From positions 186,001-250,000 of the IMG/VR virus record IMGVR_UViG_3300021963_000023: a DNA stretch of 64,000 nt; one strand, 5' to 3'. The translations under genes were made by a program, and so were the position numbers. Of the stretch, positions 32,825 to 55,396 are shown piece by piece (positions within the stretch are counted from its first letter, which is position 1; every line of letters begins with the position of its first letter). The notes under the pieces are model-generated. The model saw only the letters and a list, made by a program, of their open reading frames with translations, searched no databases and was not told where the DNA came from.

Positions 32825-32827
32825 ATA

Positions 32828-34186: not shown

Positions 34187-34191
34187 AATTT

Positions 34192-35211
34192 ATGTTAGAT
34201 AAAAAAGATTTTGTTTGTTTACAACCATTTGAGTTCACCGAATTCTTTGATTACAAAACATATATGTGCTGTCCTAATTGGTTACCAGTTGATTTGGGTG
34301 ATCCAATTGATATTAAAAACACCTGGGTTTCTGATCTAGCAAATAAGGTTAGAGAAAGTATGATAGATGGTAGTTACAAATATTGTATTGAAGCTAGATG
34401 TCCTAAATTAACGGGGTTAAAAGAAGGTAAAAGCGAAGGCTTTATGCCAAAGGAAGAGTTCTTAAGAAAAATCGATCAGTTTAAAGATCCGGTACCCAAA
34501 AGTGTTAAATTTAATTTTGATCAAAGCTGTAATCTACAGTGCCCTAGTTGTCGTTTAGAAAAAATAAATTATGTTGGGGAAGAAAGAACAAGAACGGAAT
34601 TGATATTACAAAGTATTGAAGAACAATTGTCTGAGGGTCTTGAGCATATAGAATGTACCGGATCTGGTGATCCATTTTTTTCTAGAACATTTAAGAAGTG
34701 GTTAATGACATTTAAGCCCAGTATGTACCCTAATTTAAAAAGTATACACTTACATACCAACGGTACTCTTTGGAACGAATCTAACTGGTCTAAAATGACA
34801 AATGTGCATAGATTTATTAAGTCTGCTGAGATATCTGTTGATGCAGCAACAAAAGACACGTATGAAAATTATACAAGGTTAGGTGGCAAATGGGAAGACA
34901 TCCAAAACAATCTTAGGTTTATTGCAACATTACCCAATCTAGAATATGTTACCATGTCTTTTGTTGTTCAAAATTCAAATTATAAAGAAATGGAAATGTT
35001 CTATAAGATGTCAGAAGAAATATTTGATGACACACATATCAATTGGCAGATATTTTTTAATAGAGTTGTTAACTGGGGAACATTTAAAAGTGAAGAATTT
35101 AAAATTGTTGATGTTGGTAATCCAGAACATCCAAACTACAAAGAGATGATTGAAATATACCATAGACTACCTGTTTCTAATAATATTAGACATAATTTAA
35201 CAATAGAGTAA
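34192..35211 (+). CDS. Radical SAM enzyme with N-terminal twitch-like domain (2 of 6)
   Basis: CLQPF...MCCP...C....CP, then CNLQCPSC, GSGDPF, HTNG and SVDAA. Confidence 0.9.
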   Translation: MLDKKDFVCLQPFEFTEFFDYKTYMCCPNWLPVDLGDPIDIKNTWVSDLANKVRESMIDGSYKYCIEARCPKLTGLKEGKSEGFMPKEEFLRKIDQFKDPVPKSVKFNFDQSCNLQCPSCRLEKINYVGEERTRTELILQSIEEQLSEGLEHIECTGSGDPFFSRTFKKWLMTFKPSMYPNLKSIHLHTNGTLWNESNWSKMTNVHRFIKSAEISVDAATKDTYENYTRLGGKWEDIQNNLRFIATLPNLEYVTMSFVVQNSNYKEMEMFYKMSEEIFDDTHINWQIFFNRVVNWGTFKSEEFKIVDVGNPEHPNYKEMIEIYHRLPVSNNIRHNLTIE

Positions 35212-36485
35212 TGATTGAATGTAAAAATTTAACAAATGGTTTTAGAATCGCCACCTCTGGAGGTTATTTTGCGTGTTGTCACACGTTTAATAACCCATTT
35301 AAAGATGAAAATGGTGATGAGATGGTAGCTAGCACACATTCAATTGAAGAAGGGTTAAAAAGCCCAACTAGAATGAAAATGTTAGATGATTTTAAAAATG
35401 ATATTAGGCATCCGGCTTGTGTTGTTTGTTGGTCAGCAGAAGATGCTGGATTTGTTAGTAAAAGACAAAGAGATAATGAGACATATAAAAAAATACTTGA
35501 ATTTTACCCAGAAAGAAAAGATTCTGATTTATTTTTTTTAGAATTAAATCTTGGTAACACATGTAATCTTGCATGTAGAATATGTCATATATCTGCATCA
35601 TCAAAATGGAAAGAATTTCATCATGTAACAGAAACCGATGTAACTGAAGAAAGATTAGACTTTTATGTAGATAAATATTCAAAAGCATTTAGAGACAATA
35701 GTATTGTTTGGGCTGAATTAATGAGTATACTTCCTGAAGTTAGAAGTTTAGACATATATGGGGGTGAACCAATGTTGATGAAAAAGCAATGGGAGATTTT
35801 AGAAATGTCCGTTAAGTTGGGGTATTCTAAAAAACAACAAATGAGTTTTAACACAAACGGTACAATTATAAATGAGAAGTATATTGATATTTTAAGTTCA
35901 TTTGCACAGTGTAGAATTGGGTTTAGTATTGATGGCGTTGGTAAAAGATTCAACTATTTAAGACATTTTGGGAAATGGGATGTGGTTAGTGAAAATATTA
36001 ATATTTGGCAAAATAAAGTTAAATTAATTCCAGACAATAAAATAATCTTTGAGGTATGTTGTACTATATCAATGCTAAATGTTCTTCATGTTTTTGAGAT
36101 GGTTGATTTTGTTATTGAGAACCATTTAAAATTAATGATAGCTTTTGTTTACAACCCCAGACACTTACACATTGGATATATGCCAGAGAAGTGTAAAAAA
36201 CTTATTTTAGAAAAACTTGAAGCCGAGTATGATCTTAGGATTACACAAATTAATGATGATACAACAATAGATGATTCTGAAAAACAATATAGATGGGATG
36301 TAATGAGGCAAGCACATAAAGTTATAAACACATTAAAATTACCTGTTGAGGGTACACAAGGTGATTGGCAAGAATTTAAGAGACAAACATTAGCATTAGA
36401 CATTTTAAGGAATGAATCTTTTGCTGATACATTTGCGGATTTAGAAGAAATATATAATATTACAAAAACAACAAAATTAATATAA
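35211..36485 (+). CDS. Radical SAM enzyme with N-terminal twitch-like domain (3 of 6)
   Basis: C...G..ACC...CVVCW, then CNLACRIC, YGGEP, NTNGT and SIDG. Ends TKLI. Confidence 0.9.
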   Translation: MIECKNLTNGFRIATSGGYFACCHTFNNPFKDENGDEMVASTHSIEEGLKSPTRMKMLDDFKNDIRHPACVVCWSAEDAGFVSKRQRDNETYKKILEFYPERKDSDLFFLELNLGNTCNLACRICHISASSKWKEFHHVTETDVTEERLDFYVDKYSKAFRDNSIVWAELMSILPEVRSLDIYGGEPMLMKKQWEILEMSVKLGYSKKQQMSFNTNGTIINEKYIDILSSFAQCRIGFSIDGVGKRFNYLRHFGKWDVVSENINIWQNKVKLIPDNKIIFEVCCTISMLNVLHVFEMVDFVIENHLKLMIAFVYNPRHLHIGYMPEKCKKLILEKLEAEYDLRITQINDDTTIDDSEKQYRWDVMRQAHKVINTLKLPVEGTQGDWQEFKRQTLALDILRNESFADTFADLEEIYNITKTTKLI

Positions 36486-36486
36486 G

Positions 36487-37959: not shown

Positions 37960-39258
37960 ATGGAAAAAAATTATAATAAAGAAACCTTTTGTGTTGCTCC
38001 ATGGATTGCATCGCATTTAAGTACATTTGGAAATGTTGTTCCTTGTTGTTTATATAAACAAGAACGAGTTTTCGGAGAACTTAAACAAGGTGTTCCATTA
38101 AATGAAATGTATAATTCTGATGTTGCAAAGGATATTAGAAAAAGATTGTGGAATGGTGAGAAGATAAATGAGTGTCAAATTTGCTGGTATAGAGAAGAGG
38201 TTTCAAAAGGGAAGAGCCAAGTTGATAGTTACAGATTTAATTTAAACAAACAGTTTGAAGATGAAATAGAAAACATTGTGGATAACACAAATGAAGATTT
38301 TTCATTAAAAATTATACAATTTAAACACTTAGATCTACGTTTTGATAATAAATGTAATTTAAAATGTAGGATTTGTAATCCCGGTTTTTCATCATCATTA
38401 TATAAAGAGTATAAAGCGTTAGGCTTCAATAATTTTAAAGATTATGGTCAACCATATAGTATGTCGGTTGATGATGATGAGTTTAATTTTATTTTAAGCC
38501 AATTAAAGCATGTTAAGTCATTATTTTTTGCTGGTGGCGAACCATTAACACAAGATAAACATTATCAAATATTACAATACTGCATAGACAATGACTATGC
38601 TAAAAATATAACAGTGTGGGTTACAACCAATTTCACAAAATTATATTATAAAGATTACAATATAATTGAGATGTGGAAGAAGTTCAAAGCTGTTGAGATA
38701 ACAGCGAGTATAGATGGGTTTGAAGAGAGAGGTCAATACCTTAGAAGCGGATCCAAATGGTCTGAAATAGTTGAGAATAGAAAAACACTTTTGAGAGAAC
38801 TACCAGATACTTTTTTTGGAATTGTACCAACAATTAACATAATGAATAGCTATACCATAATTGATTTATATAAAAATTGGATAGAAAATGGCTACTTACT
38901 TCCCGGTAAAATCCATATTAATTTATTGACACATCCAGAACACCTTCAGATAAAAATGCTACCTGAAAGACATAAAGAGGTTCTTAGAATATTGTATAAT
39001 AACCTTATAATTTGGATAAAAAATAACATAGCGGATAACAGTGAAGCACAACGAGACATAGGACAATTTGAATTTGTAATAGACTTGTTAAATCAAGAAA
39101 GAGATGAAGAAATGTTCCAAAAGTTTTTAAAAATGACAGACATGGTTGACACATTCAGAGGTGATGATTTCTTTTCTGTGTTTACTGAGTTTAGAGATTT
39201 TATTGATCCAAATGTTATCATTGAATTACCCAAAGATGATAATGTAAAATTATTATAA
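37960..39258 (+). CDS. Radical SAM enzyme with N-terminal twitch-like domain (5 of 6)
   Basis: FCVAPW..H...PCC...CQICW, then CNLKCRIC, AGGEP and SIDG. Ends VKLL. Confidence 0.9.
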   Translation: MEKNYNKETFCVAPWIASHLSTFGNVVPCCLYKQERVFGELKQGVPLNEMYNSDVAKDIRKRLWNGEKINECQICWYREEVSKGKSQVDSYRFNLNKQFEDEIENIVDNTNEDFSLKIIQFKHLDLRFDNKCNLKCRICNPGFSSSLYKEYKALGFNNFKDYGQPYSMSVDDDEFNFILSQLKHVKSLFFAGGEPLTQDKHYQILQYCIDNDYAKNITVWVTTNFTKLYYKDYNIIEMWKKFKAVEITASIDGFEERGQYLRSGSKWSEIVENRKTLLRELPDTFFGIVPTINIMNSYTIIDLYKNWIENGYLLPGKIHINLLTHPEHLQIKMLPERHKEVLRILYNNLIIWIKNNIADNSEAQRDIGQFEFVIDLLNQERDEEMFQKFLKMTDMVDTFRGDDFFSVFTEFRDFIDPNVIIELPKDDNVKLL

Positions 39259-40481
39259 TGAATTCCATCTCAGAAAAATTTTGCTATTTACCCTTTGGTT
39301 CAATTTATGTTGGGGCATCTGGTACACTATCACCTTGTTGTATTGCTTCTCCATTTAAAGAGAATATTCATTTCAAGGATTTCAATTCTGTTGATGAAGC
39401 AATTAATAGCGAACCATATAAACGTATTAGAAAAGAGATGTTATTTAATATTGCGCCATCTGAATGTGCGGAATGTTTTGTATATAAAAATAGACACAAA
39501 GAACATAGTAATATTGAGTTTAGAGAAGAAATAGCGGACCCATCATTATATAATGAAGACTATAGTGTAAACAAAATTGTTTACACAGATTTGAGACTTT
39601 CTAATCATTGTAATTTTAAATGTAGAATGTGTTTTCATGGATCATCATCAACCTGGTTTGAGTATTGGGGATATGTTCAAAATCAACCAGAATATGATAC
39701 CATCAATACCAAGTACTTAACAGCGGGTGACGACGCTCTTGATAAGTTTTCAGAAGAAAATATTGATTCTATTCGTAAAGTTTATTTAGCTGGTGGTGAA
39801 CCATTTATAACGCCAACAACATTTACCTTGTTAGATAGATTCAGTGACGAACAGGCTAAAAATGTTTATATATTAATTAATACAAACTTATCCACACTAA
39901 CATACAAAGGTATTGACATACTTGATAAACTTAAACGTTTTAAAACTGTAGACATCTCTTGTTCATGTGATGGGTATGGTAAAATTGGTGAATATCAAAG
40001 ACCAGGATTTAATTCTGAAAAATTCTTTAAAAATCTGGAAACGCTAATTAAGTTTAAAGAAACCAACGACAATTTCAAAGTTTCTATTGATTATACTATT
40101 TCAACAATAAACATGTACCATTCTTTTGATTTCATAAAGTTTGTTGAAGAAAATTACCTCCATTCAGATCACATTAGGTTTCATACTGTGACTCAACCTT
40201 TTTATTTTGCACCTGGAATTTGTAAGGGTGGCATGAAACAAGCGTTAATAGAACTTTATGAAAACAACATAAACAATTTAACATCACTTTGTAGATATAC
40301 GTTGATTGAATTTGTTAAATATTTAAGAAACACTGAGGATGAGGAAGTTTATAGCCACCTATTAGATAAGAAGAAATATGTTACTATTTCACTACCGGAA
40401 ACCTTAAGGAGATTTGACGAAATTAATAAAACCGATTATAAGGAAATATGCCCATGGTTAGGTGATATTTTTATTGATTAA
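39258..40481 (+). CDS. Radical SAM enzyme with N-terminal twitch-like domain (6 of 6)
   Basis: FCYLPF...PCC...CAEC, then CNFKCRMC, AGGEP and SCDG. Confidence 0.9.
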   Translation: MNSISEKFCYLPFGSIYVGASGTLSPCCIASPFKENIHFKDFNSVDEAINSEPYKRIRKEMLFNIAPSECAECFVYKNRHKEHSNIEFREEIADPSLYNEDYSVNKIVYTDLRLSNHCNFKCRMCFHGSSSTWFEYWGYVQNQPEYDTINTKYLTAGDDALDKFSEENIDSIRKVYLAGGEPFITPTTFTLLDRFSDEQAKNVYILINTNLSTLTYKGIDILDKLKRFKTVDISCSCDGYGKIGEYQRPGFNSEKFFKNLETLIKFKETNDNFKVSIDYTISTINMYHSFDFIKFVEENYLHSDHIRFHTVTQPFYFAPGICKGGMKQALIELYENNINNLTSLCRYTLIEFVKYLRNTEDEEVYSHLLDKKKYVTISLPETLRRFDEINKTDYKEICPWLGDIFID

Positions 40482-40484
40482 AAA

Positions 40485-40513
40485 TTGACTTTTCAACTTG
40501 TTTTAGCTATATT
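40485..40513 (+). promoter_or_regulatory. sigma70-like promoter TTGACT-N17-TATATT
   Basis: -35 at 40485-40490 and -10 at 40508-40513. The ATG at 40520 lies about at the expected +1, so the mRNA may be leaderless. Confidence 0.7.
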
Positions 40514-40519
40514 ATCATT

Positions 40520-40954
40520 ATGATATACTGGTTAACTGGACAACCCGGAGCAGGTAAAACAACCCTAGCAAAATACTTGGTGGAATATTTCCCTCAAAAC
40601 GAGGTTACTCACATTGATGGGGATGATCTAAGAGACATCTTTAATAATAAAGACTATTCCATTACAGGAAGAAGACTAAACATCCAAAGAGCACAATACA
40701 TTGCGCAATTCATGCATAGTAAAGGACACAATGTCATTGTATCCTTAGTTTCACCGTATAGAGATCAGAGAGAGGCATTTAAGTTCAGCACATCGGTTGT
40801 TGAGATTTATGTTCACACCACAGAAGATCGAGGTAGAAATCAATTCCACGTTGAGGAATATGAACCACCATTAGAAAATTTTATAGATATAGACACAACA
40901 ATAAAGAACGAGACAGATTCATATTATGAACTGTTAAAAAAATTATCATTATGA
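40520..40954 (+). CDS. cysC: Adenylyl-sulfate (APS) kinase
   Basis: 'WLTGQPGAGKTT', 'IDGDDLR', 'SLVSPYRDQR', 'YEPP'. Confidence 0.85.
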   Translation: MIYWLTGQPGAGKTTLAKYLVEYFPQNEVTHIDGDDLRDIFNNKDYSITGRRLNIQRAQYIAQFMHSKGHNVIVSLVSPYRDQREAFKFSTSVVEIYVHTTEDRGRNQFHVEEYEPPLENFIDIDTTIKNETDSYYELLKKLSL

Positions 40955-41331
40955 GTAAAAAATACGCAATGTATGTTGGTAGATGGCAAAATTGGCATAA
41001 GGGCCACGAATGGCTTATTAACCAACAATTAGATAAAGGAAAAGATGTGTGGGTTGCAATTAGGAACGTGCCAACGGATGAAAATAACCCTAAGACCGCA
41101 CAGCAAGTTATGATGGATCTAAGTGAAGAACCTTTCTTTAGAGAAAATTCACAAAGAATTAACATATCAATTATTCCTGATATTGAGAGCATTAATTATG
41201 GTAGAGGGGTTGGTTATGATGTAATATACCACGAACCTCCTGCGGATGTGGCGGTTATTAGTGGAACGGCAATTAGAACCGGACATATGACACCCGATGG
41301 TACAATAACATATGACCAAACTAAAGGATAA
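40951..41331 (+). CDS. HxGH nucleotidyltransferase (cytidylyltransferase-like); candidate minimal ATP sulfurylase
   Basis: 'GRWQNWHKGH', 'NP' and 'ISGTAIR' motifs; coupled to cysC. Confidence 0.7.
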   Translation: MSKKYAMYVGRWQNWHKGHEWLINQQLDKGKDVWVAIRNVPTDENNPKTAQQVMMDLSEEPFFRENSQRINISIIPDIESINYGRGVGYDVIYHEPPADVAVISGTAIRTGHMTPDGTITYDQTKG

Positions 41332-41540
41332 TGATAGTAGAAAAGAAAAGACATATAGCTAAAACCATCTCATATCGAATTGTAAGTACCTTAATTGGAT
41401 TCTTATTAATGTGGATGATTAGTGGGTCGATTAAAGTTGGTGCGGCTTTTGGTGTTGCAGAATTGATTTACAAGCCAATACAGTATTATCTACATGAAAG
41501 AATATGGTATAGATGGATTAAGTATGGTCTTAAAAAATAA
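41331..41540 (+). CDS. DUF2061-like small membrane protein
   Basis: 'RHIAKTISYRIVST...YYLHERIW' pattern, a family often found next to sulfate-activation genes. Confidence 0.7.
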   Translation: MIVEKKRHIAKTISYRIVSTLIGFLLMWMISGSIKVGAAFGVAELIYKPIQYYLHERIWYRWIKYGLKK

Positions 41541-41549
41541 TAAAACGCT

Positions 41550-42029
41550 ATGATTAACACATATCAAAATTTATTATCTGAAGAAGATTTGTTTTTCTTG
41601 AACTCGATATGTTTAAATTTTGTGGAAACACAAGTACCATATAAAAATAATAACTATGTTAGAAAAAGTTTAAACGTAAAAGAAGAATTATTAGAATACC
41701 AAGAAAGGTGTTCAAAATATTTACCAGATGGGTATAAATTAAGTGGGTTATGGATTAATAAGGTAACCGAAGAAACAAATATTAATGATGATTTTCATAA
41801 CGATGAGGCGGACTTAACTATCATTACCTACATTAATGAAGATTTTGAGGGTGGGGAATTTGAGTATTTTTTAAAAGATAAAGAAATAAAAATAACACCT
41901 CAAATAAATCATACAATTATGTTAAATAAAAAAACAAAACACCGAGTTTTAAATGTAATTAGTGGATGTAGATTTAGTTTAATTTCATTTTATACAACAA
42001 TAAAAAAAGAAGAAAAAACACTAATATGA
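41550..42029 (+). CDS. 2OG-Fe(II) oxygenase
   Basis: HND...YINEDFEGGEF...HRV..V.SG.RFSL. Ends KKEEKTLI. Confidence 0.8.
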   Translation: MINTYQNLLSEEDLFFLNSICLNFVETQVPYKNNNYVRKSLNVKEELLEYQERCSKYLPDGYKLSGLWINKVTEETNINDDFHNDEADLTIITYINEDFEGGEFEYFLKDKEIKITPQINHTIMLNKKTKHRVLNVISGCRFSLISFYTTIKKEEKTLI

Positions 42030-42589
42030 TTGATAATATAGAAATATTTGAAAACTTTCTATCACCTGAAGAATGTAATATTATTTTAAATAAATGTAAG
42101 AGTGAATTAACATTAGAAACTGCTAAAGTGTATAATAATAAAAATAATAAAAATAGTGAAAATACACGTAGAAAATCGTCTATTGCTTGGATATCTGATT
42201 TAGGATTTTTAAATGAAAGATTAACAAGTAAATTAAGAGAGTCATTCAATATAAACGGAATGGAAGTTACTGGTTTAGGTGATTATCAATTCACTGAGTA
42301 TAAAGAACAAGAATACTTTGATTGGCATGTAGATAGTACTGATTTGTTATATAGAGATAGATTCGCATCTATAGTAATTCAGCTAAATGATAACTACACC
42401 GGTGGCATATTGGAAATTAAAAACAGTAAAGGTGAAGTTGTACCAATAGAGAATAGAATTGGAACATTATATGTTTTTAATTCAAGATTACTTCATAGAG
42501 TAGTACCTGTGGTTGAGGGTGTACGTTATTCGTTAGTTAATTGGATATCATTGGTTAAAACCGATTTTAAAAAACAAAATTTAATATGA
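42026..42589 (+). CDS. 2OG-Fe(II) oxygenase (prolyl-hydroxylase/PKHD-like)
   Basis: WHVD...QLNDNYTGG.L...HRVVPVVEGVRYSLVNW. Ends KKQNLI. Confidence 0.85.
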   Translation: MIDNIEIFENFLSPEECNIILNKCKSELTLETAKVYNNKNNKNSENTRRKSSIAWISDLGFLNERLTSKLRESFNINGMEVTGLGDYQFTEYKEQEYFDWHVDSTDLLYRDRFASIVIQLNDNYTGGILEIKNSKGEVVPIENRIGTLYVFNSRLLHRVVPVVEGVRYSLVNWISLVKTDFKKQNLI

Positions 42590-43203
42590 TAAACGGGTAC
42601 CACATATTTGATGATATAATTCCAGAATTAAATCAAAATAAATTAGAAGAATATGTTAAGTTTTCAAATTTAAAATGGAATTATCAACACAACATTACGG
42701 GGCTATATGGTGGAACGGATTCATTAGAATTACCCGCAAATGTTTTAAAGGGTATTGATATTACAGACACTACAATTCTTAATATAATAAATTCAATAAA
42801 GTTAAATTTACTAAATAAACTTAATTTGGAATTTGAAAAGGATTATCGATATAAAATAAATTGGACCACCCCTATAGGAAAAAAATATGATTTTAAAAAT
42901 TTAATACATATTGATATGGATGTGGCCCATATTGCTATTGTTTATTATATAAACGATACCGATGGCAACACTATTTTTTTAAATAATAAAAATGGAAATT
43001 CTTCAGAATCCCATCAAAATAATTTTAAAGGTGTCAATTTGGATGATTTTGAAATTGTAAATAGAATACCACCCAAAAAAGGTAGGGCGGTTATATTTGA
43101 TGGTAACATTTATCACTATGGCGAATACCCAACAATAACCGATAGATTTATAATTAATTTTGATTTAGTTGGTAAAAATAAGAACAAAAATAAATTAATA
43201 TAA
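42586..43203 (+). CDS. 2OG-Fe(II) oxygenase
   Basis: HID...YYINDTDG.T...PKKGRAVIFDG..YH...RFIINF. Ends KNKNKLI. Confidence 0.75.
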   Translation: MINGYHIFDDIIPELNQNKLEEYVKFSNLKWNYQHNITGLYGGTDSLELPANVLKGIDITDTTILNIINSIKLNLLNKLNLEFEKDYRYKINWTTPIGKKYDFKNLIHIDMDVAHIAIVYYINDTDGNTIFLNNKNGNSSESHQNNFKGVNLDDFEIVNRIPPKKGRAVIFDGNIYHYGEYPTITDRFIINFDLVGKNKNKNKLI

Positions 43204-43204
43204 T

Positions 43205-43843
43205 ATGGAAAAGATATTTTTTGATGACACAACATACATTTGGAAAACCAAATTAAATTATACAGGTGATAAATCATCTTTTTTAAAAGAAGCGTACTCT
43301 CTTATAGAATCCCAACCTAAAGTTAAATCAGATGGATTTGGATATAAAAGAGAATGGAACGAACATTTAAATTTTATTGGTGATGTTAAGGTTGAAACAA
43401 AATTAGATGAAATTTTTAAAATCGGTATTAATAAATGTAAAGAAATTTATAATGAAAAAAATATAAATTACAATAAAATCAATACAGACTCTTGGGTTAA
43501 TGTTGTTCGATCAAAAAATCCAGTACAAGACAATTTTCACAATGGTAAAAAATATCATATACATACCGAAATTAATAAAGGAAACAAACAATTTATTCCA
43601 CACTATACATATGTTTATTATATTCAAATGCCAGATGTAATGAATGGCGATGATGGTGTATTGTGTTTTTTAGGTGAAAATAAGAAAGAATATTTCATCA
43701 AACCAGAAGAAGATGATTTAATTATTATGGAGGCACATATCCCACACTCTCCAAATAGTGCACCAAACTCCACATTAGATAGAATAGTTATGGCTGGAAA
43801 CGTTGGTTTTGATTTTATTAAAAAAGAAAAAACAATATTATAA
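43205..43843 (+). CDS. Putative 2OG-Fe(II) oxygenase
   Basis: SWVN...HIH...YVYY...PEEDDLII...PHSP...RIVMAGN. Ends KKEKTIL. Confidence 0.7.
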   Translation: MEKIFFDDTTYIWKTKLNYTGDKSSFLKEAYSLIESQPKVKSDGFGYKREWNEHLNFIGDVKVETKLDEIFKIGINKCKEIYNEKNINYNKINTDSWVNVVRSKNPVQDNFHNGKKYHIHTEINKGNKQFIPHYTYVYYIQMPDVMNGDDGVLCFLGENKKEYFIKPEEDDLIIMEAHIPHSPNSAPNSTLDRIVMAGNVGFDFIKKEKTIL

Positions 43844-44565
43844 TGCTAGTAGAAAATAAATTTTTATTTGTAAATCTACCAAGATGTGCTTCAACCTCTT
43901 TTCATATATCATGTTTAAGAAGTGGATTTAAAATTGAACATTACGGCCAATCATTTGTAGACAATTATCATACACCAATTAATTTAACACTTAGTAATGA
44001 AGAGCTAGCAGACAACATGGTTCATCTTCATGAAAGATTAGATGTGTTACTTTCAAAATTTGGGAATGAATATGATATCATATCCATAAAAAGAGATAAG
44101 TACGAAAGATTCTTATCATTGTGGAAGCATATAATCGATATAGCACACATGGAAGGTAATATCGAATTATATAATATATTTAAAAAACTAGAGTTAGAAG
44201 ATATTTTATTTTATAATTATTCAGATTTAATATCGAATGAGGAGTCTGTAATATCTGAATTTGTGAGAAGAAATAAAATTGAAAAACATATGACAGACAT
44301 TCTTTATACTATGTTAATTATTTTAGTTAGACATGTCTCATTTTGGCATAATAATAATCCCAAAATAAAATGGTTTGAATTTGGTGAGTTTACAGAATTA
44401 GAAGAATGGGTTTCTAATAAAACAGGTAAACCATTTAAAATGGGGAAATCAAATGGAAGTCAACATTTTGATTGCAAATTAAAAATGAATAGTGATTTCA
44501 TAAAAAGATATAATAATATTTATGATTATTATGATTTTCAAAAAAATGTTAAGACACTAATATAA
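43843..44565 (+). CDS. Sulfotransferase-like protein (Sulfotransfer_2-like)
   Basis: 5'-PSB-like 'FVNLPRCASTS' and 3'-PB-like 'RDKYERFLSLW'. Ends KNVKTLI. Confidence 0.65.
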   Translation: MLVENKFLFVNLPRCASTSFHISCLRSGFKIEHYGQSFVDNYHTPINLTLSNEELADNMVHLHERLDVLLSKFGNEYDIISIKRDKYERFLSLWKHIIDIAHMEGNIELYNIFKKLELEDILFYNYSDLISNEESVISEFVRRNKIEKHMTDILYTMLIILVRHVSFWHNNNPKIKWFEFGEFTELEEWVSNKTGKPFKMGKSNGSQHFDCKLKMNSDFIKRYNNIYDYYDFQKNVKTLI

Positions 44566-44566
44566 C

Positions 44567-44869
44567 ATGATTAACACCCCTAATATCGATTATAAAGAAA
44601 TATTTGAAGCCTGGAAAATTTCACTCAAACCAACACTAAAACAAGAAGAATTGGCTAAACTTAGGCTTGAGGTTTGTTTGGGGTGTAATTATAGAAAAGA
44701 AGTGGTTAAGGGGTTAAAATGGAGCACTCTTTGTGGAAAATGTGGATGCCCCTTAAATAAAAAAGTGTTTTCCCCAAATTATAATTCCTGCCCAGAAAAA
44801 TTATGGGGTGATATTGATTCTAATTATTTGGAACCTCTTAACCCCAAAAATAAAAACACTTTAATATAA
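44567..44869 (+). CDS. Small Cys-rich (metal-binding) protein
   Basis: R..VCLGC...CGKCGC.L..K......CP..W. Ends KNKNTLI. Confidence 0.65.
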   Translation: MINTPNIDYKEIFEAWKISLKPTLKQEELAKLRLEVCLGCNYRKEVVKGLKWSTLCGKCGCPLNKKVFSPNYNSCPEKLWGDIDSNYLEPLNPKNKNTLI

Positions 44870-44954
44870 ATAGTATATATCTATATATGTATATACAAAT
44901 TTTAAAATGGTGATTAGTGATATTTATATAATAAGAAATAAAAAATAAGATTTT

Positions 44955-46448
44955 ATGAAAGCAACAATAATTGGTAGTGATTTTTTACAAAAAGATGGTT
45001 CGGTCAAATTTTTGGAAATAAATACAAACACCACAATCTATAATGAGGGCGCGGATTTGTTAGAATATGACGCGTTATTTAATATGTTAAATGTTAATAA
45101 TATTACAGAATTTCATTATATATGGACGGAAAATGATGCATATAGCCCATTAAATCAGGCACACAGATTTGTGCAAATATTAAAAACAAAATGTGAGGAA
45201 AATAATATATCATATACTGATCATATTGTGCCAATGAATTCGGTAACTGTACCTTTTATTGAAGACGCTAATAATAAATTTATCTTAAGACAGTCCTTTG
45301 ATACTACCGCATTGGTAGATGAAACATATTGTGCTGATAAATTTGAATTTTTTAATTTAATGAAAGATTCACAATATATCCCCAAAACACATTACACATC
45401 GGATACATTAAATTTAAATACTTTGGATGAGGTGAATTATACTGATACTGAAAACCCAAACGTATTAATAAAATATCGTTATCCACAATATGATAAATCA
45501 TTATACCCGGCCCTATATGCAGTTTCTAATAATACCGAATTATCTGATACAATAAATTCTGCTGAAAGTAATTTTTTAGTTCAAGAATTTATATTTTCAG
45601 AAGAAAATTTGGTGGAGGGTAGATATTCGATTATAAGAGGGATTGATATCATATATGGGTCTAATTTAGATGTTATTAATATGGGTGGCTATAGTCAATC
45701 CACGATAATACCGGTTTTATTTGCAACTACAGAACTTATTCCCAATACAAAAAAATTAAACCAAAAAAGTAGATACAAATATATTACAAAAGATGTTGGT
45801 GGATCAAAAGGAAAAGATTATCATACCGATGATGATTCAAATATTTTAAACTATGATGGCTCATTAACAAATGTTAGTACAATACAATTGGGTGATTATG
45901 TTCGTTCTATTAATTTTGTGGATTCAAATGAAAATGAAGCTAAAGCTTTTACTAATGAAATTTTAACATACGGTTGGGATAGTACATTACAGCAATCAAA
46001 TGACACATTAGTACCATTACAATCTGAATTAGTGGGTATGATATCATCATCAGTTGAAATGGTAATGATAAAAATAACATTAGAAGATGGTAGAACTTGG
46101 TCAGATACTCCTGCGTGTGTATATTATATTGAAGAAAAAGATTCAACAGCAACTAGGTTTGAAAAGGTAAATAGTCTATATGTTGGTGATAAATTAGTTA
46201 TAACCGATTCAAATACTAATCAATTAACAACCATAACAATTACGGGATTAGAAATGATATATGAAACCAAAACAATTTACACATTAGATTTTGCACCTTC
46301 TGATTTATTCTTAGTTGATATTGGCGATTTTCAATTTAGTGTAATGCATAATGGTTGCTGGTGTAGTTATTCATATTGTGGTAACTGGTGTTATTCATCA
46401 TGGTGTCCAACCTGTCAATATGGCGGGTTTCAAAAATTTCAACCCTAA
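44955..46448 (+). CDS. Circularly permuted ATP-grasp domain + Hint (intein-like) domain + C-terminal 31-aa Cys-rich peptide
   Basis: ATP-grasp motifs: 'GSDF...DGSVKFLEINTN' at the N-terminus, then 'ADKFEF...IPKT', 'VLIK' and 'LVQEFI'. Hint blocks: 'ILNYDGS...IQLGDYV', 'ITLEDGR...T', 'LYVGDKL' and 'IYTLDF..SDLFLV...VMHN'. These are followed by GCWCSYSYCGNWCYSSWCPTCQYGGFQKFQP. Confidence 0.75.
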   Translation: MKATIIGSDFLQKDGSVKFLEINTNTTIYNEGADLLEYDALFNMLNVNNITEFHYIWTENDAYSPLNQAHRFVQILKTKCEENNISYTDHIVPMNSVTVPFIEDANNKFILRQSFDTTALVDETYCADKFEFFNLMKDSQYIPKTHYTSDTLNLNTLDEVNYTDTENPNVLIKYRYPQYDKSLYPALYAVSNNTELSDTINSAESNFLVQEFIFSEENLVEGRYSIIRGIDIIYGSNLDVINMGGYSQSTIIPVLFATTELIPNTKKLNQKSRYKYITKDVGGSKGKDYHTDDDSNILNYDGSLTNVSTIQLGDYVRSINFVDSNENEAKAFTNEILTYGWDSTLQQSNDTLVPLQSELVGMISSSVEMVMIKITLEDGRTWSDTPACVYYIEEKDSTATRFEKVNSLYVGDKLVITDSNTNQLTTITITGLEMIYETKTIYTLDFAPSDLFLVDIGDFQFSVMHNGCWCSYSYCGNWCYSSWCPTCQYGGFQKFQP

Positions 46449-46482
46449 GATTTTTAATAAAAATATAAAATAAAAACATATC

Positions 46483-46629
46483 ATGGCAAAGACCCCAAAA
46501 ATAAGAGAAGAAAGACCATCAACTGTTATCAAGTTAGTAATTAGTCCACTATCTACGGATGTAAAGACAAAAATATCAACAGCATTTCAAGCAGTTGTTA
46601 CCGCTATAAAAGATAAACACTTATCATAA
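46483..46629 (+). CDS. 48-aa basic small protein, not in the ORF track
   Basis: ATG at 46483 to TAA at 46629 (MAKTPKIREERPSTVIKLVISPLSTDVKTKISTAFQAVVTAIKDKHLS). It has an A-rich leader and fills an otherwise empty gap. Confidence 0.6.
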   Translation: MAKTPKIREERPSTVIKLVISPLSTDVKTKISTAFQAVVTAIKDKHLS

Positions 46630-46664
46630 GTTAAAAAGACGAATGTTTGTTCATCCATTTATAT

Positions 46665-47234
46665 ATGATAAATCATTCAATCAATAATAACGTATTTACA
46701 CAAACCGAATGTCTTGATATAATTGATTTTTGTATTCAACACGGTAAACCTTTTTCATATCGTCCGAATGAATTTTGGGATTGTAGAAGAATACATGATG
46801 AGGGATTTAAGGAACAAATAATTACTTCATTAATGAATAATTATAAAACCGGGAATTTTAATTTATGGTTTGATTTTGATGATTTTAATCTAAGGAATTT
46901 TCTTATTAGTTTAACATCTTATTACGATGGTAGATACCTAAATTTACACAAAGATATTGATAGTGAGTTAACGTCGGTAATTGTATTATCAAATGGATTT
47001 GAAGGTGGTCAATTCGCATTAAGTGATAGTAACAGACCAGATATTCATTTTAATAAAATGGATGATATTACTACTTATGATTTAAAAATTGGTGATATGA
47101 TATCCTTCAATGGGTCAAAAACCTATCATGGGGTTTTACCGGTCACAAATGGTACACGATATGCCTTAAATATTTGGATGGATAACATCAATTCTGACCG
47201 ATTAAAACGTAAAGTTGAAAAAACATTGATATGA
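46665..47234 (+). CDS. 2OG-Fe(II) oxygenase
   Basis: HKD...FEGGQF...GDMISF..YHGVLPVTNGTRYALNIW. Start moved to the ATG at 46665. Ends KVEKTLI. Confidence 0.85.
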   Translation: MINHSINNNVFTQTECLDIIDFCIQHGKPFSYRPNEFWDCRRIHDEGFKEQIITSLMNNYKTGNFNLWFDFDDFNLRNFLISLTSYYDGRYLNLHKDIDSELTSVIVLSNGFEGGQFALSDSNRPDIHFNKMDDITTYDLKIGDMISFNGSKTYHGVLPVTNGTRYALNIWMDNINSDRLKRKVEKTLI

Positions 47235-47728
47235 GTATATTAATTGTTGCATTACCTAGAACCGGTTCAACTTCATTATTATATAAATTAGCAAAAGAAA
47301 AGGGATTAACTCCGATATTTGAACCATTCGATAATAGTGGAAGATTTAAGTATAATGGTGAAAAAAACGTAGTCCTTAAAACAATAATATGTCATCACCC
47401 AAACAATTTTGAATTAAGTAAGTACTTTGACAAGGTAATATTATTATCTAGAAAAAATATATTAGAATGTGTAGAATCTCACGCATACCAAATCTACTTC
47501 TCAAAAAAGAAAAATTACAATTCAAATCATCAATATTATTACGAAGAAGTACCATCTAAGTTATTTGATTTATGTTATAATGATGTAATGAAATGGAATA
47601 AGGATTTGAGTGAATTATCTTATAGACTTAACACCCCAATTACATATTATGAAGACATATATGATATCAATAGTAATGAAAGATTACGAAAAGGGAATAA
47701 AAGTGAATTTAATAAAAAACTAATTTAA
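47231..47728 (+). CDS. Sulfotransferase-like P-loop protein
   Basis: 'VALPRTGSTSL...EPF...ILLSRKN...ES...YYEDIY'. Ends NKKLI. Confidence 0.65.
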   Translation: MSILIVALPRTGSTSLLYKLAKEKGLTPIFEPFDNSGRFKYNGEKNVVLKTIICHHPNNFELSKYFDKVILLSRKNILECVESHAYQIYFSKKKNYNSNHQYYYEEVPSKLFDLCYNDVMKWNKDLSELSYRLNTPITYYEDIYDINSNERLRKGNKSEFNKKLI

Positions 47729-47733
47729 TTATT

Positions 47734-48141
47734 GTGAATTATACAACACCATATGATTTTTTAAAAAATTGTGTAATGACTAGAATCAAACCAAGTGGGG
47801 TACACGGTGTTGGTGTTTTTGCAATTAGGGATATTAAAAAGGGTGAAACCGTTTTTGAATTTTGGCAAGGAAAAACGGGGATATATGAAATTTCTAAAGC
47901 TGAGTTTGACACCTTTTCAGAGGAATTACAAGATTTTATAAGAGCAATGCGTGGTCACCCGTATAAAGTTAAACTTACAAATGGGTGTGTATATGGTTGT
48001 ACAAATCATTATATTAATACAAATTTTGAAAACGGAACGGTTGATTGTTTCACATTTAAAGCATTGGCCGATATTCCATTAAATGAGGAGTTGTTTAGTA
48101 ATTATGGGAATAACCATAGACATGAATATAAATTAATATAA
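47734..48141 (+). CDS. SET-domain protein (putative lysine methyltransferase)
   Basis: 'PSGVHGVGVFAIRDIKKGE', 'YIN', 'ALADIPLNEELFSNY'. GTG start. Ends EYKLI. Confidence 0.8.
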   Translation: MNYTTPYDFLKNCVMTRIKPSGVHGVGVFAIRDIKKGETVFEFWQGKTGIYEISKAEFDTFSEELQDFIRAMRGHPYKVKLTNGCVYGCTNHYINTNFENGTVDCFTFKALADIPLNEELFSNYGNNHRHEYKLI

Positions 48142-48142
48142 A

Positions 48143-48706
48143 ATGATTATTACAATACTATGTGAACCTAGAAGTGGATCTACAAATTTGGCCAATTGGT
48201 TTTTTATAAGAAAGGATTTCACGGTATTATATGAACCATATAATATTAAGTCAGAATGGTACAAGAACAAAATACCACCCCAAAACTGGGAATTTACAAC
48301 TGAACATCTATTAATAAAGGAAATTTATTCAAAAGAAATAAATTATACCGATTTATTAGACATATCAGACAAAATCATTATTCTTTATAGAGAAAATGAA
48401 TATGAACAATCGCTATCCTGGGAAAATGCTGTTGCAACAAATAACTGGGATAGGCCGTGGGTTTATGAAGAAAACTCTGAAAAAAAACAAACCGTAGGGT
48501 TGGATTATTTTTATGATATAAAAGAAGGTATTAAAGAAAATTATATTAATAAGAATTATTTCACAATATCATACGAAGAATTATATTATAATAATGGGTT
48601 TCAAAGGGTTGTGGATTACCTTAATATTGATGGTGTTGAGAACACTGGGTTCCCATATGGCCAGAAATATAGAATTAATACTGACAAACCCAGGCCATTA
48701 ATTTAA
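48143..48706 (+). CDS. Sulfotransferase-like P-loop protein (Stf0-like)
   Basis: 'EPRSGSTNL...EPY...IILYREN..EQSLS...ISYEELY'. Ends KPRPLI. Confidence 0.65.
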   Translation: MIITILCEPRSGSTNLANWFFIRKDFTVLYEPYNIKSEWYKNKIPPQNWEFTTEHLLIKEIYSKEINYTDLLDISDKIIILYRENEYEQSLSWENAVATNNWDRPWVYEENSEKKQTVGLDYFYDIKEGIKENYINKNYFTISYEELYYNNGFQRVVDYLNIDGVENTGFPYGQKYRINTDKPRPLI

Positions 48707-54258: not shown

Positions 54259-54276
54259 AATTTATATTTATAAGAT

Positions 54277-55383: not shown

Positions 55384-55396
55384 AACTAATTAAAAT

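What the first reader, a model, noticed from the sequence alone, without database searches (positions are those of the whole stretch)
35211..48706. Shared C-terminal K-rich '...L-I-stop' tag on a dozen unrelated enzymes
Seen: proteins of unrelated folds end alike. TKTTKLI (36485, radical SAM), DNVKLL (39258, radical SAM), KEEKTLI (42029), KKQNLI (42589), KNKNKLI (43203), KEKTIL (43843), NVKTLI (44565), NKNTLI (44869), VEKTLI (47234), FNKKLI (47728), HEYKLI (48141), KPRPLI (48706), and outside the island ETEKLL (57322). All ten flanking proteins of 100 aa or more between 41550 and 48706 carry it. The ATP-grasp-Hint protein, the 48-aa ORF and all fibre genes do not. Codons vary (Leu CTA/TTA/TTG, Ile ATA/ATT, stop TAA/TGA), and the tag persists at 44869 and 48706, where no gene overlaps the stop. 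Both points argue for selection at protein level. Inference: a docking or sorting signal that recruits enzymes to a scaffold, compartment or virion, a degron, or the carboxylate substrate to which the ATP-grasp domain ligates the Hint-released Gly-peptide.
Basis: partly seen in the sequence, partly recalled or inferred. Interest (0 to 1): 0.88.

Follow-up and report, generated by a model that had tools for sequence, protein, structure and literature searches.

The report
Shared C-terminal tag on phage enzymes
In a large uncultured freshwater phage and its relatives, a dozen or so unrelated peptide-modifying enzymes all end in the same four-residue tail (Lys/Asn, Lys/Thr/Ser/Asn, Leu/Ile, Ile/Leu), and this tail occurs only in genes clustered around a self-cleaving precursor protein that carries a cysteine-rich peptide, so it is most likely a handle that gathers the enzymes onto their common substrate.

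Summary
In the window, 10 of 56 genes end in Leu-Ile (0.32 expected, p about 1e-12), and all ten lie at 41.5-48.7 kb. In 62 related viral loci, gene families are bimodal: 80-100% of members end [LI][LI], or none do. The tagged families form 14-15 profile-unrelated groups, including Trp halogenase, 2OG oxygenases, radical SAM, SET, GDSL hydrolase and a Zn-ribbon protein. Codon usage and junction tests show selection on the amino acids, not on DNA. Homologous enzymes in cultured relatives (P-SSM2, HTVC008M) lack the tail. 'A dozen unrelated enzymes' is overstated for the window itself, where five are 2OG paralogues and three belong to one other family. The 57322 case is undecided.

The tagged genes always flank one untagged protein (44955-46448). 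It has a circularly permuted ATP-grasp-like domain, a Hint domain ending in invariant His-Asn, and a Cys/Trp/Tyr-rich tail. Family-wide, that tail is hypervariable, which is the layout of a peptide precursor. Divergent versions of this precursor are again flanked by tagged genes, one with its own -LL dialect.

Best reading: the tail is a C-terminal docking handle, read by the precursor complex, that recruits a variable set of tailoring enzymes. Rivals are ligation of the tail by the ATP-grasp domain, a degron, and localisation. I found no published description.

The parts
41550..42029 (+). 2OG-Fe(II) oxygenase (fam 17), ends KTLI
   Evidence: Pfam PF13640 E 7e-7. All 17 family members end [LI][LI].
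42026..42589 (+). 2OG-Fe(II) oxygenase (fam 0), ends QNLI
   Evidence: Pfam PF13640 E 3e-14. 98 family members, 95% end [LI][LI].
42586..43203 (+). probable 2OG oxygenase (fam 14), ends NKLI
   Evidence: Pfam PF13640 E 2.6e-4, below the gathering score. hhalign to fam 0 gives 82% probability. 78% of members are tagged; others end -LV.
43205..43843 (+). probable 2OG oxygenase (fam 4), ends KTIL; universal core gene
   Evidence: Pfam PF13640 E 1.6e-3. Present in 41 of 42 loci upstream of the precursor. 84% of members tagged.
43843..44565 (+). fam 2 protein, possibly sulfotransferase-like, ends KTLI; universal core gene
   Evidence: PHROG 3347 Gal-3-O-sulfotransferase, E 2.9e-4, weak. All 61 members tagged. 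Present in 41 of 42 loci.
44567..44869 (+). fam 5: small Zn-ribbon protein (DUF6171-like) with a flexible Lys-rich tail ending NTLI; constant partner of the precursor gene
   Evidence: Six invariant Cys and an invariant Lys at -7. DUF6171 hit in 10 of 24 members, best E 4e-6. Homologues lie next to the precursor gene in L059, L060, L073, L178 and L179, all ending in the tag. No gene overlaps its stop.
44955..45809 (+). precursor protein (fam 3), N-terminal circularly permuted ATP-grasp-like domain; untagged
   Evidence: AF2 pLDDT 82. Foldseek best hits 3k1t, 1m0t and 8fbz (glutathione-synthetase type), E 3e-4 to 7e-3, TM about 0.4. D9, E21, N23, R112, D122, K173 and R228 are at least 95% conserved in 118 divergent homologues.
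45822..46352 (+). precursor protein, Hint (intein-like) domain ending in invariant His465-Asn466
   Evidence: Foldseek hits to Hedgehog Hint, BIL and mini-inteins, E 3e-8 to 1e-5, target TM 0.7-0.8. H465 and N466 invariant. The L080 homologue hits Pfam PT-HINT at E 2e-10.
46353..46448 (+). Cys/Trp/Tyr-rich 31-residue tail after the His-Asn junction: the putative core peptide
   Evidence: Pattern x-CWC-x4-CG-x2-C-x4-C-x2-C is conserved in the clade. Predicted disordered, pLDDT below 50. Family-wide, the tails are hypervariable and Cys-rich, median 48 aa with 8 Cys.
46483..46629 (+). conserved 48-aa Lys-rich ORF; untagged
   Evidence: Present directly after the precursor gene in every locus of the clade. 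Weak match in L080. Absent from L178 and L179.
46647..47234 (+). 2OG-Fe(II) oxygenase (fam 0), ends KTLI
   Evidence: Pfam PF13640 E 5e-9.
47231..47728 (+). fam 1 protein (unknown function, linked to fam 2), ends KKLI
   Evidence: All 63 members tagged. hhalign fam 1 to fam 2 gives 90% probability. Present in 44 of 46 loci downstream.
47734..48141 (+). SET-domain methyltransferase, ends YKLI
   Evidence: Pfam PF00856 E 7.5e-8. Only near-identical orthologues were found, so conservation of its tail is untested.
48143..48706 (+). fam 1 paralogue, ends RPLI; no gene overlaps its stop
   Evidence: BLASTP to 47231 E 2e-5. Family 100% tagged.
35211..36485 (+). radical SAM enzyme, ends TKLI; probable member
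   Evidence: Pfam PF04055. Orthologues at 37-64% identity end KLL, SLV, SIV, KIV and SVL; one lineage ends KLT.
37960..39258 (+). radical SAM enzyme with N-terminal SPASM-type domain, ends VKLL; possible member
   Evidence: Pfam. The positional orthologue ends VNLI in L089 but DFIN in L086.
56558..57322 (+). PHROG 1409 protein ending EKLL; membership undecided
   Evidence: PHROG 1409 E 2e-47. All 79 orthologues recovered are at least 86% identical and end E[KQ]LL, so this is uninformative and consistent with chance.
40520..41540 (+). untagged accessory genes inside the island: APS-kinase-like P-loop protein, 126-aa kinase-like protein, DUF2061 membrane protein
   Evidence: Pfam PF01583 E 4e-17 and PF09834 E 2e-16. 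PHROG 10255. These families are 0% tagged. The same untagged trio occurs in L178.

Best explanation
The tail is a short C-terminal docking handle: a Lys-rich linker followed by [K/N]-[K/T/S/N]-[L/I]-[I/L]-COOH. It belongs to a phage-encoded peptide-maturation system. The centre of the system is an untagged precursor protein, consisting of an ATP-grasp-like enzyme domain, a Hint self-cleaving domain and a Cys-rich core peptide.

In this model, a variable set of tailoring enzymes (oxygenases, halogenase, radical SAM, methyltransferases, hydrolase, sulfotransferase-like proteins) and a constant small Zn-ribbon protein each carry the handle. Its free hydrophobic carboxy-terminus is read by one common receptor in the precursor complex, most likely the acidic ATP-grasp-Hint scaffold. 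This brings every enzyme to the core peptide while it is still tethered. Asn cyclisation at the His-Asn junction then releases the modified peptide.

Shown: the motif, its selection at protein level, its restriction to genes flanking the precursor, the precursor's architecture, and the recurrence of tags around divergent precursors. Inferred: that the tag is bound, which protein binds it, and the order of events.
For: (1) Families are bimodal, 80-100% tagged or 0%. The tagged ones form 14-15 profile-independent groups covering FAD halogenase, SGNH hydrolase, radical SAM, DSBH, SET and Zn-ribbon folds.
(2) Selection is on amino acids and on the extreme C-terminus.
(3) The tag is clade-specific. 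Homologous halogenases and dioxygenases in P-SSM2, HTVC008M and L073 lack it, and in tagged halogenases the ancestral C-terminal region is replaced by a short Lys-rich tail.
(4) Tagged genes form contiguous arrays on both sides of the precursor gene, median 11 per 21 kb. Every universal core gene is tagged except the precursor and the 48-aa ORF. Adjacent modules (glycosyltransferases, methyltransferase, APS-kinase-like, DUF2061, HSP20, UvdE, fibres) are untagged.
(5) Divergent precursors with different tails are again flanked by tagged genes: L080 4 of 5, L178 8 of 8, L179 about 12, L180 3 of 4.
(6) L179 has its own dialect (-LL; P 4e-4), shared by its Zn-ribbon homologue, as expected if one co-evolving reader exists.
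(7) In L073 only the Zn-ribbon partner is tagged, which suggests the handle began in the Zn-ribbon/precursor pair.
(8) The tails are basic (+1.37 against +0.23 net charge, p 0.002) and the precursor scaffold is the third most acidic of 68 families, pI 4.3.
(9) The precursor has the expected layout: conserved scaffold, invariant His-Asn, hypervariable Cys-rich end.
Against: No PDZ, TPR or other known C-terminus-binding domain was found in the roughly 50 window and locus proteins scanned. Within the main clade there is no per-genome dialect (permutation: 386 of 2000). The dialect argument rests on one divergent genome. In L073 two enzymes next to a precursor homologue are untagged, so the tag is not obligatory for such systems. 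The electrostatic complementarity is weak evidence. That the enzymes act on the Cys-rich tail is itself an inference from gene neighbourhood.
Confidence: 0.5

Rival explanations
1. Covalent handle. The ATP-grasp-like domain of the precursor activates the free alpha-carboxylate of the tail and ligates it to an amine. The amine would be either the new N-terminus of the Hint-released peptide or the conserved Lys near the precursor's C-terminus. The Zn-ribbon protein, and perhaps the enzymes, would thereby be tethered to the peptide, in the manner of the LysW carrier protein and the LysX ligase.
For: The N-domain looks like an active ligase: 12 polar residues are at least 95% conserved across 118 divergent homologues, including E21-x-N23, R112, K173 and R228, and its fold is nearest to glutathione synthetases, which activate a C-terminal carboxylate. 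The motif is strictly at the free C-terminus. The constant partner is a small Zn-ribbon protein with a long flexible tail, formally like LysW, onto whose C-terminal residue LysX loads the substrate. Most core peptides contain few acidic residues, so protein C-termini are the obvious carboxylates. A Lys lies within the last four residues of 80 of 110 precursor representatives, against 20% expected.
Against: Ligating 8-16 different enzymes to a peptide stoichiometrically would consume them, and no release protease is evident. Fam 5 has no detectable similarity to LysW. LysW uses an acidic tail and a side-chain carboxyl, not a hydrophobic alpha-carboxylate. ATP-grasp assignment rests on low TM scores and faint Pfam hits (RimK E 0.06 in 2 of 36). 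The ligase could equally act on the peptide's own C-terminus, for example in macrocyclisation.
Confidence: 0.17
2. Degron. The basic stretch plus hydrophobic C-terminus is recognised by a host AAA+ protease or unfoldase (ClpXP/ClpAP, FtsH or Lon), so that these oxidising and halogenating enzymes are short-lived or are remodelled during infection.
For: Hydrophobic C-termini, and basic-plus-hydrophobic C-termini, are established bacterial degradation or remodelling signals; examples are the ssrA-type LAA end and the C-terminus of MuA (from my own knowledge of the ClpX literature, not tested here). The motif needs the free C-terminus and a flexible linker. A genome-specific dialect could reflect different hosts.
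Against: The tag is confined to genes flanking the precursor and is absent from some 44 other genes in the window, including neighbouring enzymes. The most constant carrier is a small non-enzymatic Zn-ribbon protein, which is tagged even where the enzymes are not. Cultured relatives use the same enzyme families without the tail. Phages rarely programme bulk turnover of a whole late-expressed enzyme set.
Confidence: 0.12
3. Localisation signal. The tail sends the enzymes to a common place other than the precursor, such as the membrane (polybasic stretch plus hydrophobic end), a proteinaceous compartment, or the assembling virion or tail fibres.
For: In function it resembles PTS1 tripeptides, encapsulin cargo-loading peptides and polybasic membrane anchors. 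In the window, the island is embedded in the tail-fibre module. A DUF2061 membrane protein is encoded in the island.
Against: In other genomes the island lies next to UvdE, HSP20 and HD genes, not fibres. No shell or compartment gene is seen near the island. Two hydrophobic residues make a weak membrane anchor. Packaging 8-16 cofactor-dependent enzymes into a virion has no precedent.
Confidence: 0.08
4. No shared function. The ending is a by-product of AT-rich gene junctions, translational coupling or cassette-boundary recombination sites.
For: The genome has about 30% G+C. ATA is over-used at the last codon where stop and start overlap. TGA stops are commoner after tagged genes.
Against: Wrong-frame stops give only 1-2% LI. 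Leu codon usage at -2 equals body usage, and the ATA excess vanishes when a spacer follows. Untagged families sit in the same operons with the same tight junctions. Substitutions keep hydrophobicity (L, I, V, M, F) by changing the first codon base while the second stays T.
Confidence: 0.02

Closest known systems
Cyanophage tandem arrays of 2OG dioxygenases with tryptophan halogenases (Iyer et al. 2010, PMC2938197)
   Same: The same kind of island: many distantly related dioxygenases plus Trp halogenases in one phage gene cluster, predicted to modify a peptide. The halogenase here is about 30% identical to those of S-PM2, P-SSM2 and HTVC008M.
   Different: In the passages I read, that work names no substrate and mentions no shared C-terminal motif. 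The cultured phages' enzymes lack the tail, and those phages have no homologue of the ATP-grasp-Hint precursor.
PTS1 peroxisomal targeting tripeptide, including its use by fungal secondary-metabolite enzymes (from my own knowledge)
   Same: A very short motif at the extreme C-terminus with a free carboxylate, carried by folded enzymes of unrelated families that work in one pathway, and read by one receptor.
   Different: PTS1 has a different consensus ([SAC]-[KRH]-[LM]) and is a eukaryotic organelle import signal read by the Pex5 TPR domain. Here there is a phage, no organelle and no TPR protein seen.
Encapsulin cargo-loading peptides and microcompartment encapsulation peptides (from my own knowledge)
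   Same: Terminal peptides shared by unrelated cargo enzymes encoded next to their partner.
   Different: Those are about 10-20 residues long, do not depend on the terminal carboxylate, and come with a shell gene. No shell gene is near this island.
Docking domains of PKS/NRPS subunits (PMC9113145)
   Same: Short terminal regions that organise the proteins of one biosynthetic pathway.
   Different: Docking domains are 20-40-residue folded elements that pair specifically to set an order. Here one degenerate four-residue end is common to all partners.
LysW amino-group carrier protein with LysX ATP-grasp ligase (PMC12998189)
   Same: A small Zn-ribbon protein with a flexible C-terminal tail encoded beside an ATP-grasp-type ligase. 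LysX conjugates the substrate to the C-terminal residue of LysW, and later enzymes work on the tethered substrate.
   Different: There is no sequence similarity. LysW's tail is acidic and a Glu side chain is used. Here the tail is basic and hydrophobic, and the enzymes carry it as well.
RiPP precursors: leader peptide recognised by enzyme RRE domains; borosin-type precursors fused to their own enzyme (from my own knowledge)
   Same: A conserved N-terminal part, a fixed cleavage point, a hypervariable C-terminal core, and tailoring enzymes encoded alongside. As in borosins, an enzyme domain and the core peptide are in one polypeptide.
   Different: The 'leader' is a 466-residue ATP-grasp-Hint protein that would cleave itself, and the recognition tag sits on the enzymes rather than on the precursor.
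Pretoxin-HINT modules of polymorphic toxin systems (Pfam PF07591)
   Same: A Hint domain placed just before a variable C-terminal module that it is thought to release. The L080 homologue hits PT-HINT.
   Different: Here the released module is a short Cys-rich peptide, not an enzymatic toxin domain. The protein is phage-encoded, starts with an ATP-grasp-like domain, and is surrounded by tailoring enzymes.

Membership tests
C-terminal short linear docking motif (PDZ/TPR-ligand type) | Motif restricted to the extreme C-terminus with a free carboxylate | tested here: met
   Information is concentrated in the last four positions. There is no internal enrichment, 18 against 18.1.
C-terminal short linear docking motif (PDZ/TPR-ligand type) | Convergent presence on unrelated proteins, conserved through conservative substitutions | tested here: met
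   14-15 profile-independent groups. L, I, V, M and F are interchangeable.
C-terminal short linear docking motif (PDZ/TPR-ligand type) | An identified reader domain that binds the motif | tested here: inconclusive
   No PDZ or TPR domain in about 50 scanned proteins. Co-folding was not available and three quarters of the genome was not seen.
PTS1 peroxisomal signal | Consensus [SAC]-[KRH]-[LM]-COOH | tested here: not met
   The consensus here is [KN]-[KTSN]-[LI]-[IL].
Encapsulin or microcompartment cargo peptide | Shell protein gene next to the cargo genes | tested here: not met
   No shell-type family among the island genes.
Bacterial C-terminal degron (ssrA-like or MuA-like) | Tag-dependent degradation by ClpXP, ClpAP, FtsH or Lon | not testable with these tools
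   This needs stability assays. Only the formal resemblance (basic stretch plus hydrophobic end) is seen.
LysW/LysX amino-group carrier system | Small Zn-ribbon carrier homologous to LysW with an acidic C-terminal tail ending in Glu | tested here: not met
   Fam 5 has six invariant Cys but hits only DUF6171, with no LysW hit in Pfam or PDB. Its tail is basic and ends in Leu/Ile.
LysW/LysX amino-group carrier system | ATP-grasp ligase encoded beside the carrier | tested here: inconclusive
   Adjacency is constant. The ATP-grasp fold is supported only moderately.
Hint / intein superfamily (precursor residues about 290-466) | Hint fold | tested here: met
   Foldseek target TM 0.7-0.8, E down to 3e-8.
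Hint / intein superfamily (precursor residues about 290-466) | C-terminal His-Asn pair for Asn cyclisation | tested here: met
   H465 and N466 are invariant in 36 sequences. HN is present in 110 of 117 full-length representatives.
Hint / intein superfamily (precursor residues about 290-466) | N-terminal Cys/Ser nucleophile and TxxH block | tested here: inconclusive
   No invariant Cys or Ser at the start of the domain and no invariant His in the block-B region. This suggests C-terminal cleavage only. The cleavage itself was not tested.
ATP-grasp superfamily (precursor residues 1-285) | ATP-grasp fold | tested here: inconclusive
   Best matches are glutathione-synthetase-type enzymes, E 3e-4 to 7e-3, but TM is about 0.4 and rmsd 9-10 A. 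A profile search of PDB finds nothing.
ATP-grasp superfamily (precursor residues 1-285) | Sequence-family membership (Pfam) | tested here: not met
   No Pfam hit for the window protein. RimK hits at E 0.06 in 2 of 36 members.
ATP-grasp superfamily (precursor residues 1-285) | Conserved Mg/phosphate-binding E-x-N and basic residues | tested here: met
   E21, N23, R112, K173 and R228 are 98-100% conserved in 118 divergent sequences. Assigning them to catalytic roles is my inference.
RiPP-type precursor and gene cluster | Conserved N-terminal part, fixed cleavage site, hypervariable core | tested here: met
RiPP-type precursor and gene cluster | Tailoring enzymes act on the core peptide | not testable with these tools
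   Only gene neighbourhood supports this. It needs mass spectrometry of the product.

The most novel reading that the evidence does not exclude
These phages run an inverted form of ribosomal-peptide maturation. The large precursor protein reads a four-residue C-terminal handle carried by every tailoring enzyme. Its own ATP-grasp domain may use that free carboxylate to tether the Zn-ribbon partner, and perhaps the enzymes, covalently to the core peptide or to its conserved terminal Lys. The result would be a self-assembling, self-cleaving peptide-modification machine, and a new enzyme would need only four added residues to plug into it.
Probability: 0.2. Interest if true: 0.92.

Novelty: new variant of a known kind. 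Interest (0 to 1): 0.8.

Why it matters
If the tail is a recruitment handle, it shows a very cheap way for a virus to assemble and reshuffle a multi-enzyme pathway. Any enzyme that gains four terminal residues joins the pathway, which would explain why the islands vary from 8 to 16 enzymes between close relatives.

It would also give the long-puzzling dioxygenase and halogenase arrays of T4-like aquatic phages a concrete substrate: the Cys-rich peptide released by a Hint domain. And it would define a large family of self-cleaving peptide precursors for which I found no published description (306 clusters at 50% identity, 650 at 90%).

Practically, a four-residue tag with a defined reader would be a compact tool for co-localising enzymes. 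The motif is also a simple bioinformatic marker for finding the tailoring enzymes of such clusters.

Tried and rejected
DNA-level explanations were tested and rejected: AT bias, start/stop overlap, cassette boundary.

Hidden paralogy as the source of the shared ending is rejected for the clade, though it explains part of the in-window list.

Per-genome tag dialect within the main clade is not significant. It appears only in the divergent L179.

The 48-aa ORF as universal reader is unlikely, because it is absent from L178 and L179, where tags abound.

HSP20 as reader was considered, because its groove binds I-x-I motifs. I set it aside: the tag is two adjacent hydrophobic residues with Lys at -4, and HSP20 is not consistently near the island.

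Fam 29, ending RHLIP, is a multi-pass membrane protein, so I excluded it from the tagged set.

These searches found nothing:
- megablast and tblastn of the island and the precursor against cultured phages
- phmmer and a profile search of the precursor against PDB sequences
- Pfam and PHROG scans of the precursor
- viral-contig scans for subgroups P0265 and P0348

The scan of cellular genomes gave a single 5-kb MAG contig. The first homologue search with a tagged oxygenase returned only close relatives, so it did not reach cellular homologues. The first all-against-all hhalign run timed out and was repeated on 46 families.

Full report
What the window is. The 64-kb window is AT-rich (26-39% G+C) and almost all its genes are on the + strand. 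It matches the right-hand end of a 251-kb viral contig from a metagenome (IMGVR_UViG_3300021963_000023, L004, 100% identity). Positions 0-25 kb and 48.8-56.5 kb encode tail-fibre-type proteins. No cultured phage is close. The halogenase family of related islands is about 30% identical to those of T4-like cyanophages and pelagiphage HTVC008M.

Checking the observation. Of 56 genes, 10 end in Leu-Ile against 0.32 expected from composition (p 9e-13), and 13 end in [LI][LI] against 1.27 expected. As an AT-matched null I took the dipeptide before every stop codon in the wrong frames: LI is 1.2-1.4% window-wide and 1.9% inside the island. Between 41550 and 48706, 10 of 12 genes carry the ending, against 3 of 44 elsewhere (Fisher p 5e-7). 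The four-residue motif is not enriched inside proteins (18 against 18.1 expected).

The three endings outside the core (36485, 39258, 57322) are therefore within chance on numbers alone. Orthologues settle the first. The 35211 radical SAM family at 37-64% identity ends KLL, SLV, SIV, KIV and SVL, with one lineage ending KLT. The second is mixed. The third is uninformative, because all orthologues found are at least 86% identical.

Protein level or DNA level. I fetched 62 related loci through the central 497-aa protein, at 46-100% identity. Among 1,216 ORFs, 318 end LI, 105 LL, 102 II and 24 IL. Clustering gives a bimodal picture: families are 80-100% tagged or 0% tagged.

Leu codon usage at position -2 is the same as in gene bodies. 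The final Ile is enriched in ATA only where the stop overlaps the next start codon. With a spacer longer than 30 nt, ATA:ATT is 27:27, as in gene bodies, and 65 dereplicated tagged genes have such a spacer. Replacements are L, I, V, M or F, so the middle codon base stays T while the first base changes. Untagged families sit in the same tightly packed operons. The selection is therefore on the peptide.

The family-weighted profile is: K 0.42 / N 0.18 at -4; K 0.30 / T 0.18 / S 0.15 / N 0.10 at -3; L 0.62 / I 0.29 at -2; I 0.61 / L 0.19 at -1. A Lys-rich stretch precedes these positions. The tail carries +1.37 net charge, against +0.23 in untagged families.

Are the proteins unrelated? In the window, only partly. 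Five are 2OG-Fe(II) oxygenase paralogues. Three belong to the linked families 1 and 2, with a weak sulfotransferase hit. One is a SET-domain protein and one is a small Zn-ribbon protein.

Across the clade, the claim holds. Tagged families include a Trp halogenase (Pfam E 3e-88), a GDSL/SGNH hydrolase, radical SAM enzymes and a Rossmann methyltransferase. With the last eight residues removed, profile-profile comparison leaves 14-15 independent groups among 21 tagged families.

The tail is a clade-specific addition. The halogenases and dioxygenases of P-SSM2 and HTVC008M lack it. In an alignment, the tagged halogenases have the C-terminal region of their marine relatives replaced by a short Lys-rich tail.

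What the tagged genes surround. The only universal untagged genes are the 497-aa protein (44955-46448) and the small ORF after it. Families 4, 2 and 5 lie upstream in 38-41 of 42 loci. Families 1 and 0 lie downstream in 38-44 of 46 loci. A 21-kb locus holds a median of 11 tagged genes, range 8-16.

The AlphaFold model of the 497-aa protein (pLDDT 77.6) has a C-terminal half that matches Hedgehog Hint, BIL domains and mini-inteins, with target TM 0.7-0.8. It ends in an invariant His465-Asn466.

Folded alone (pLDDT 82), the N-terminal 285 residues match glutathione-synthetase-type enzymes best (3k1t, 1m0t, 8fbz; E 3e-4 to 7e-3; TM only about 0.4). From established knowledge, these are circularly permuted ATP-grasp ligases. 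Sequence methods see almost nothing.

After His-Asn comes a 31-residue tail predicted to be disordered, with the pattern x-CWC-x4-CG-x2-C-x4-C-x2-C and conserved aromatic residues.

The wider family. A profile of the N-domain finds 306 clusters at 50% identity among 1.84 billion proteins, always at the N-terminus of proteins of 460-900 residues. In 110 of 117 full-length representatives a His-Asn junction follows. After the junction there is either a hypervariable Cys-rich tail (median 48 residues, 8 Cys) or further Hint domains ending VHNK. Twelve polar residues of the N-domain are at least 95% conserved across 118 divergent sequences, including E21-x-N23, R112, K173 and R228, so it is probably an active enzyme. 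A Lys lies within the last four residues in 80 of 110, against 20% expected.

A conserved scaffold, a fixed cleavage point and a hypervariable Cys-rich end are the layout of a peptide precursor. The neighbouring halogenase, oxygenases, radical SAM, methyltransferase and sulfotransferase-like enzymes fit tailoring of a Cys/Trp/Tyr-rich peptide. Iyer et al. (PMC2938197) predicted peptide modification for the cyanophage dioxygenase and halogenase arrays, but named no substrate and, in the passages I read, no shared tail.

Does the tag travel with the precursor? Yes, in most of the divergent systems I could sample:
- L080: a double-Hint precursor bracketing a 12-residue Tyr/Gly-rich peptide. Four of five flanking ORFs end TII, NVI, NAI and AII.
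- L178: eight of eight downstream ORFs are tagged. The APS-kinase-like, kinase-like and DUF2061 genes are untagged, just as in the window.
- L179: about twelve tagged ORFs, dominated by -LL and with -LF, -VF, -LY and -LV variants (P 4e-4 against the clade-wide LL frequency). Its Zn-ribbon homologue also ends -LL.
- L180/L181: three of four flanking ORFs are tagged.
- L073: a marine MAG contig where only the Zn-ribbon homologue is tagged. The adjacent oxygenase and halogenase are not.

The Zn-ribbon protein has six invariant Cys and resembles DUF6171. It accompanies the precursor gene in five of six divergent loci. The 48-aa ORF is missing from L178 and L179.

Interpretation. The tail is a system-specific, protein-level signal that needs a free hydrophobic C-terminus on a basic flexible linker. 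It is tied to the ATP-grasp-Hint precursor and its Zn-ribbon partner.

The most economical reading is a docking handle that brings a changeable set of tailoring enzymes to the tethered core peptide before the Hint domain releases it (confidence about 0.5).

The main rival keeps the same partner but makes the link covalent. ATP-grasp enzymes activate carboxylates. The pairing of a small Zn-ribbon protein that has a flexible tail with an ATP-grasp-type ligase recalls LysW and LysX (PMC12998189), although there is no homology and the tail chemistry differs.

A degron or a localisation signal cannot be excluded without experiments. Both explain the restriction to precursor-flanking genes, and the tagging of a non-enzymatic partner, less well. 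A junction or AT-bias artefact is excluded.

Novelty. Searches of the open literature found no description of the tag, of Hint-fused Cys-rich precursors in phages, or of this ATP-grasp-like family. Short terminal targeting or docking peptides are a known kind of device, so I rate the finding a new variant of a known kind. If the precursor itself reads or ligates the handle, the principle would be new.

Limits:
- Genes were called as longest non-overlapping ORFs.
- Only 64 of 251 kb of this genome was visible.
- Structure predictions were single-chain.
- No binding, cleavage or modification was tested.
- Comparison with cellular homologues was not achieved.

Noticed in passing
L080:10001-11887: A divergent precursor homologue in which a 12-residue Tyr/Gly-rich peptide lies between a first Hint-like domain ending VHN and a second canonical Hint (Pfam PT-HINT) that starts with Cys and ends VHN-K. 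The peptide is thus bracketed by two self-cleaving domains, an arrangement that could yield a C-terminally activated or cyclised peptide. About 30 of 110 family representatives end in such short tails after multiple HN junctions.
   Followed up: partly
window 32828-34186, 37960-39258, 39258-40481: Radical SAM paralogues in which the SPASM-type Cys-rich domain lies at the N-terminus (residues about 10-76), before the radical SAM core. This is the reverse of the usual order.
   Followed up: no
window 53119-56506: Three tandem fibre-associated paralogues (PHROG 1417) all end in the same GTSSGHCGWR motif, with or without one further residue (T or G).
   Followed up: no
window 46483-46629 and the equivalent position in L001-L062: A 44-49-residue Lys-rich ORF with a conserved ERP...VIK...LKTK...AFQ..V..IK.KHL pattern follows the precursor gene in every locus of the clade. 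It has no match in Pfam or PHROGs.
   Followed up: partly
precursor C-termini, e.g. window 46434-46445; P0241-P0390: A Lys lies within the last four residues of 80 of 110 precursor representatives (20% expected, p 6e-33), even where the tail after the last His-Asn is a single residue. It may be an acceptor amine, a methylation site for the SET enzyme, or a recognition residue.
   Followed up: partly
window 26726-35211: Directly upstream of the island lies an untagged module: a methyltransferase, two GT2-like and two GT7-plus-ConA-lectin glycosyltransferases, and radical SAM enzymes. It sits inside the fibre region and may be a glycan or fibre-modification module.
   Followed up: partly
window 40520-41540; L178:4614-5646: An APS-kinase-like P-loop protein, a small kinase-like protein and a DUF2061 membrane protein recur together, untagged, beside the tagged array. 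Together with the weak sulfotransferase-like hit of family 2, this hints at sulfation chemistry.
   Followed up: no
L062:10001-11695: In this locus the precursor ORF runs on to 564 residues, and its end resembles the intramolecular-chaperone tail of phage fibre or spike proteins. This could be a fusion or an assembly artefact.
   Followed up: no
L073 (JABJFP010000318.1): The only hit in 185,579 species-representative cellular genomes is a 5-kb contig binned to a Methanobacteriota MAG. Its gene content (DUF932, 2OG oxygenase, halogenase, Zn-ribbon, precursor) looks viral, so it is probably a mis-binned phage fragment.
   Followed up: no
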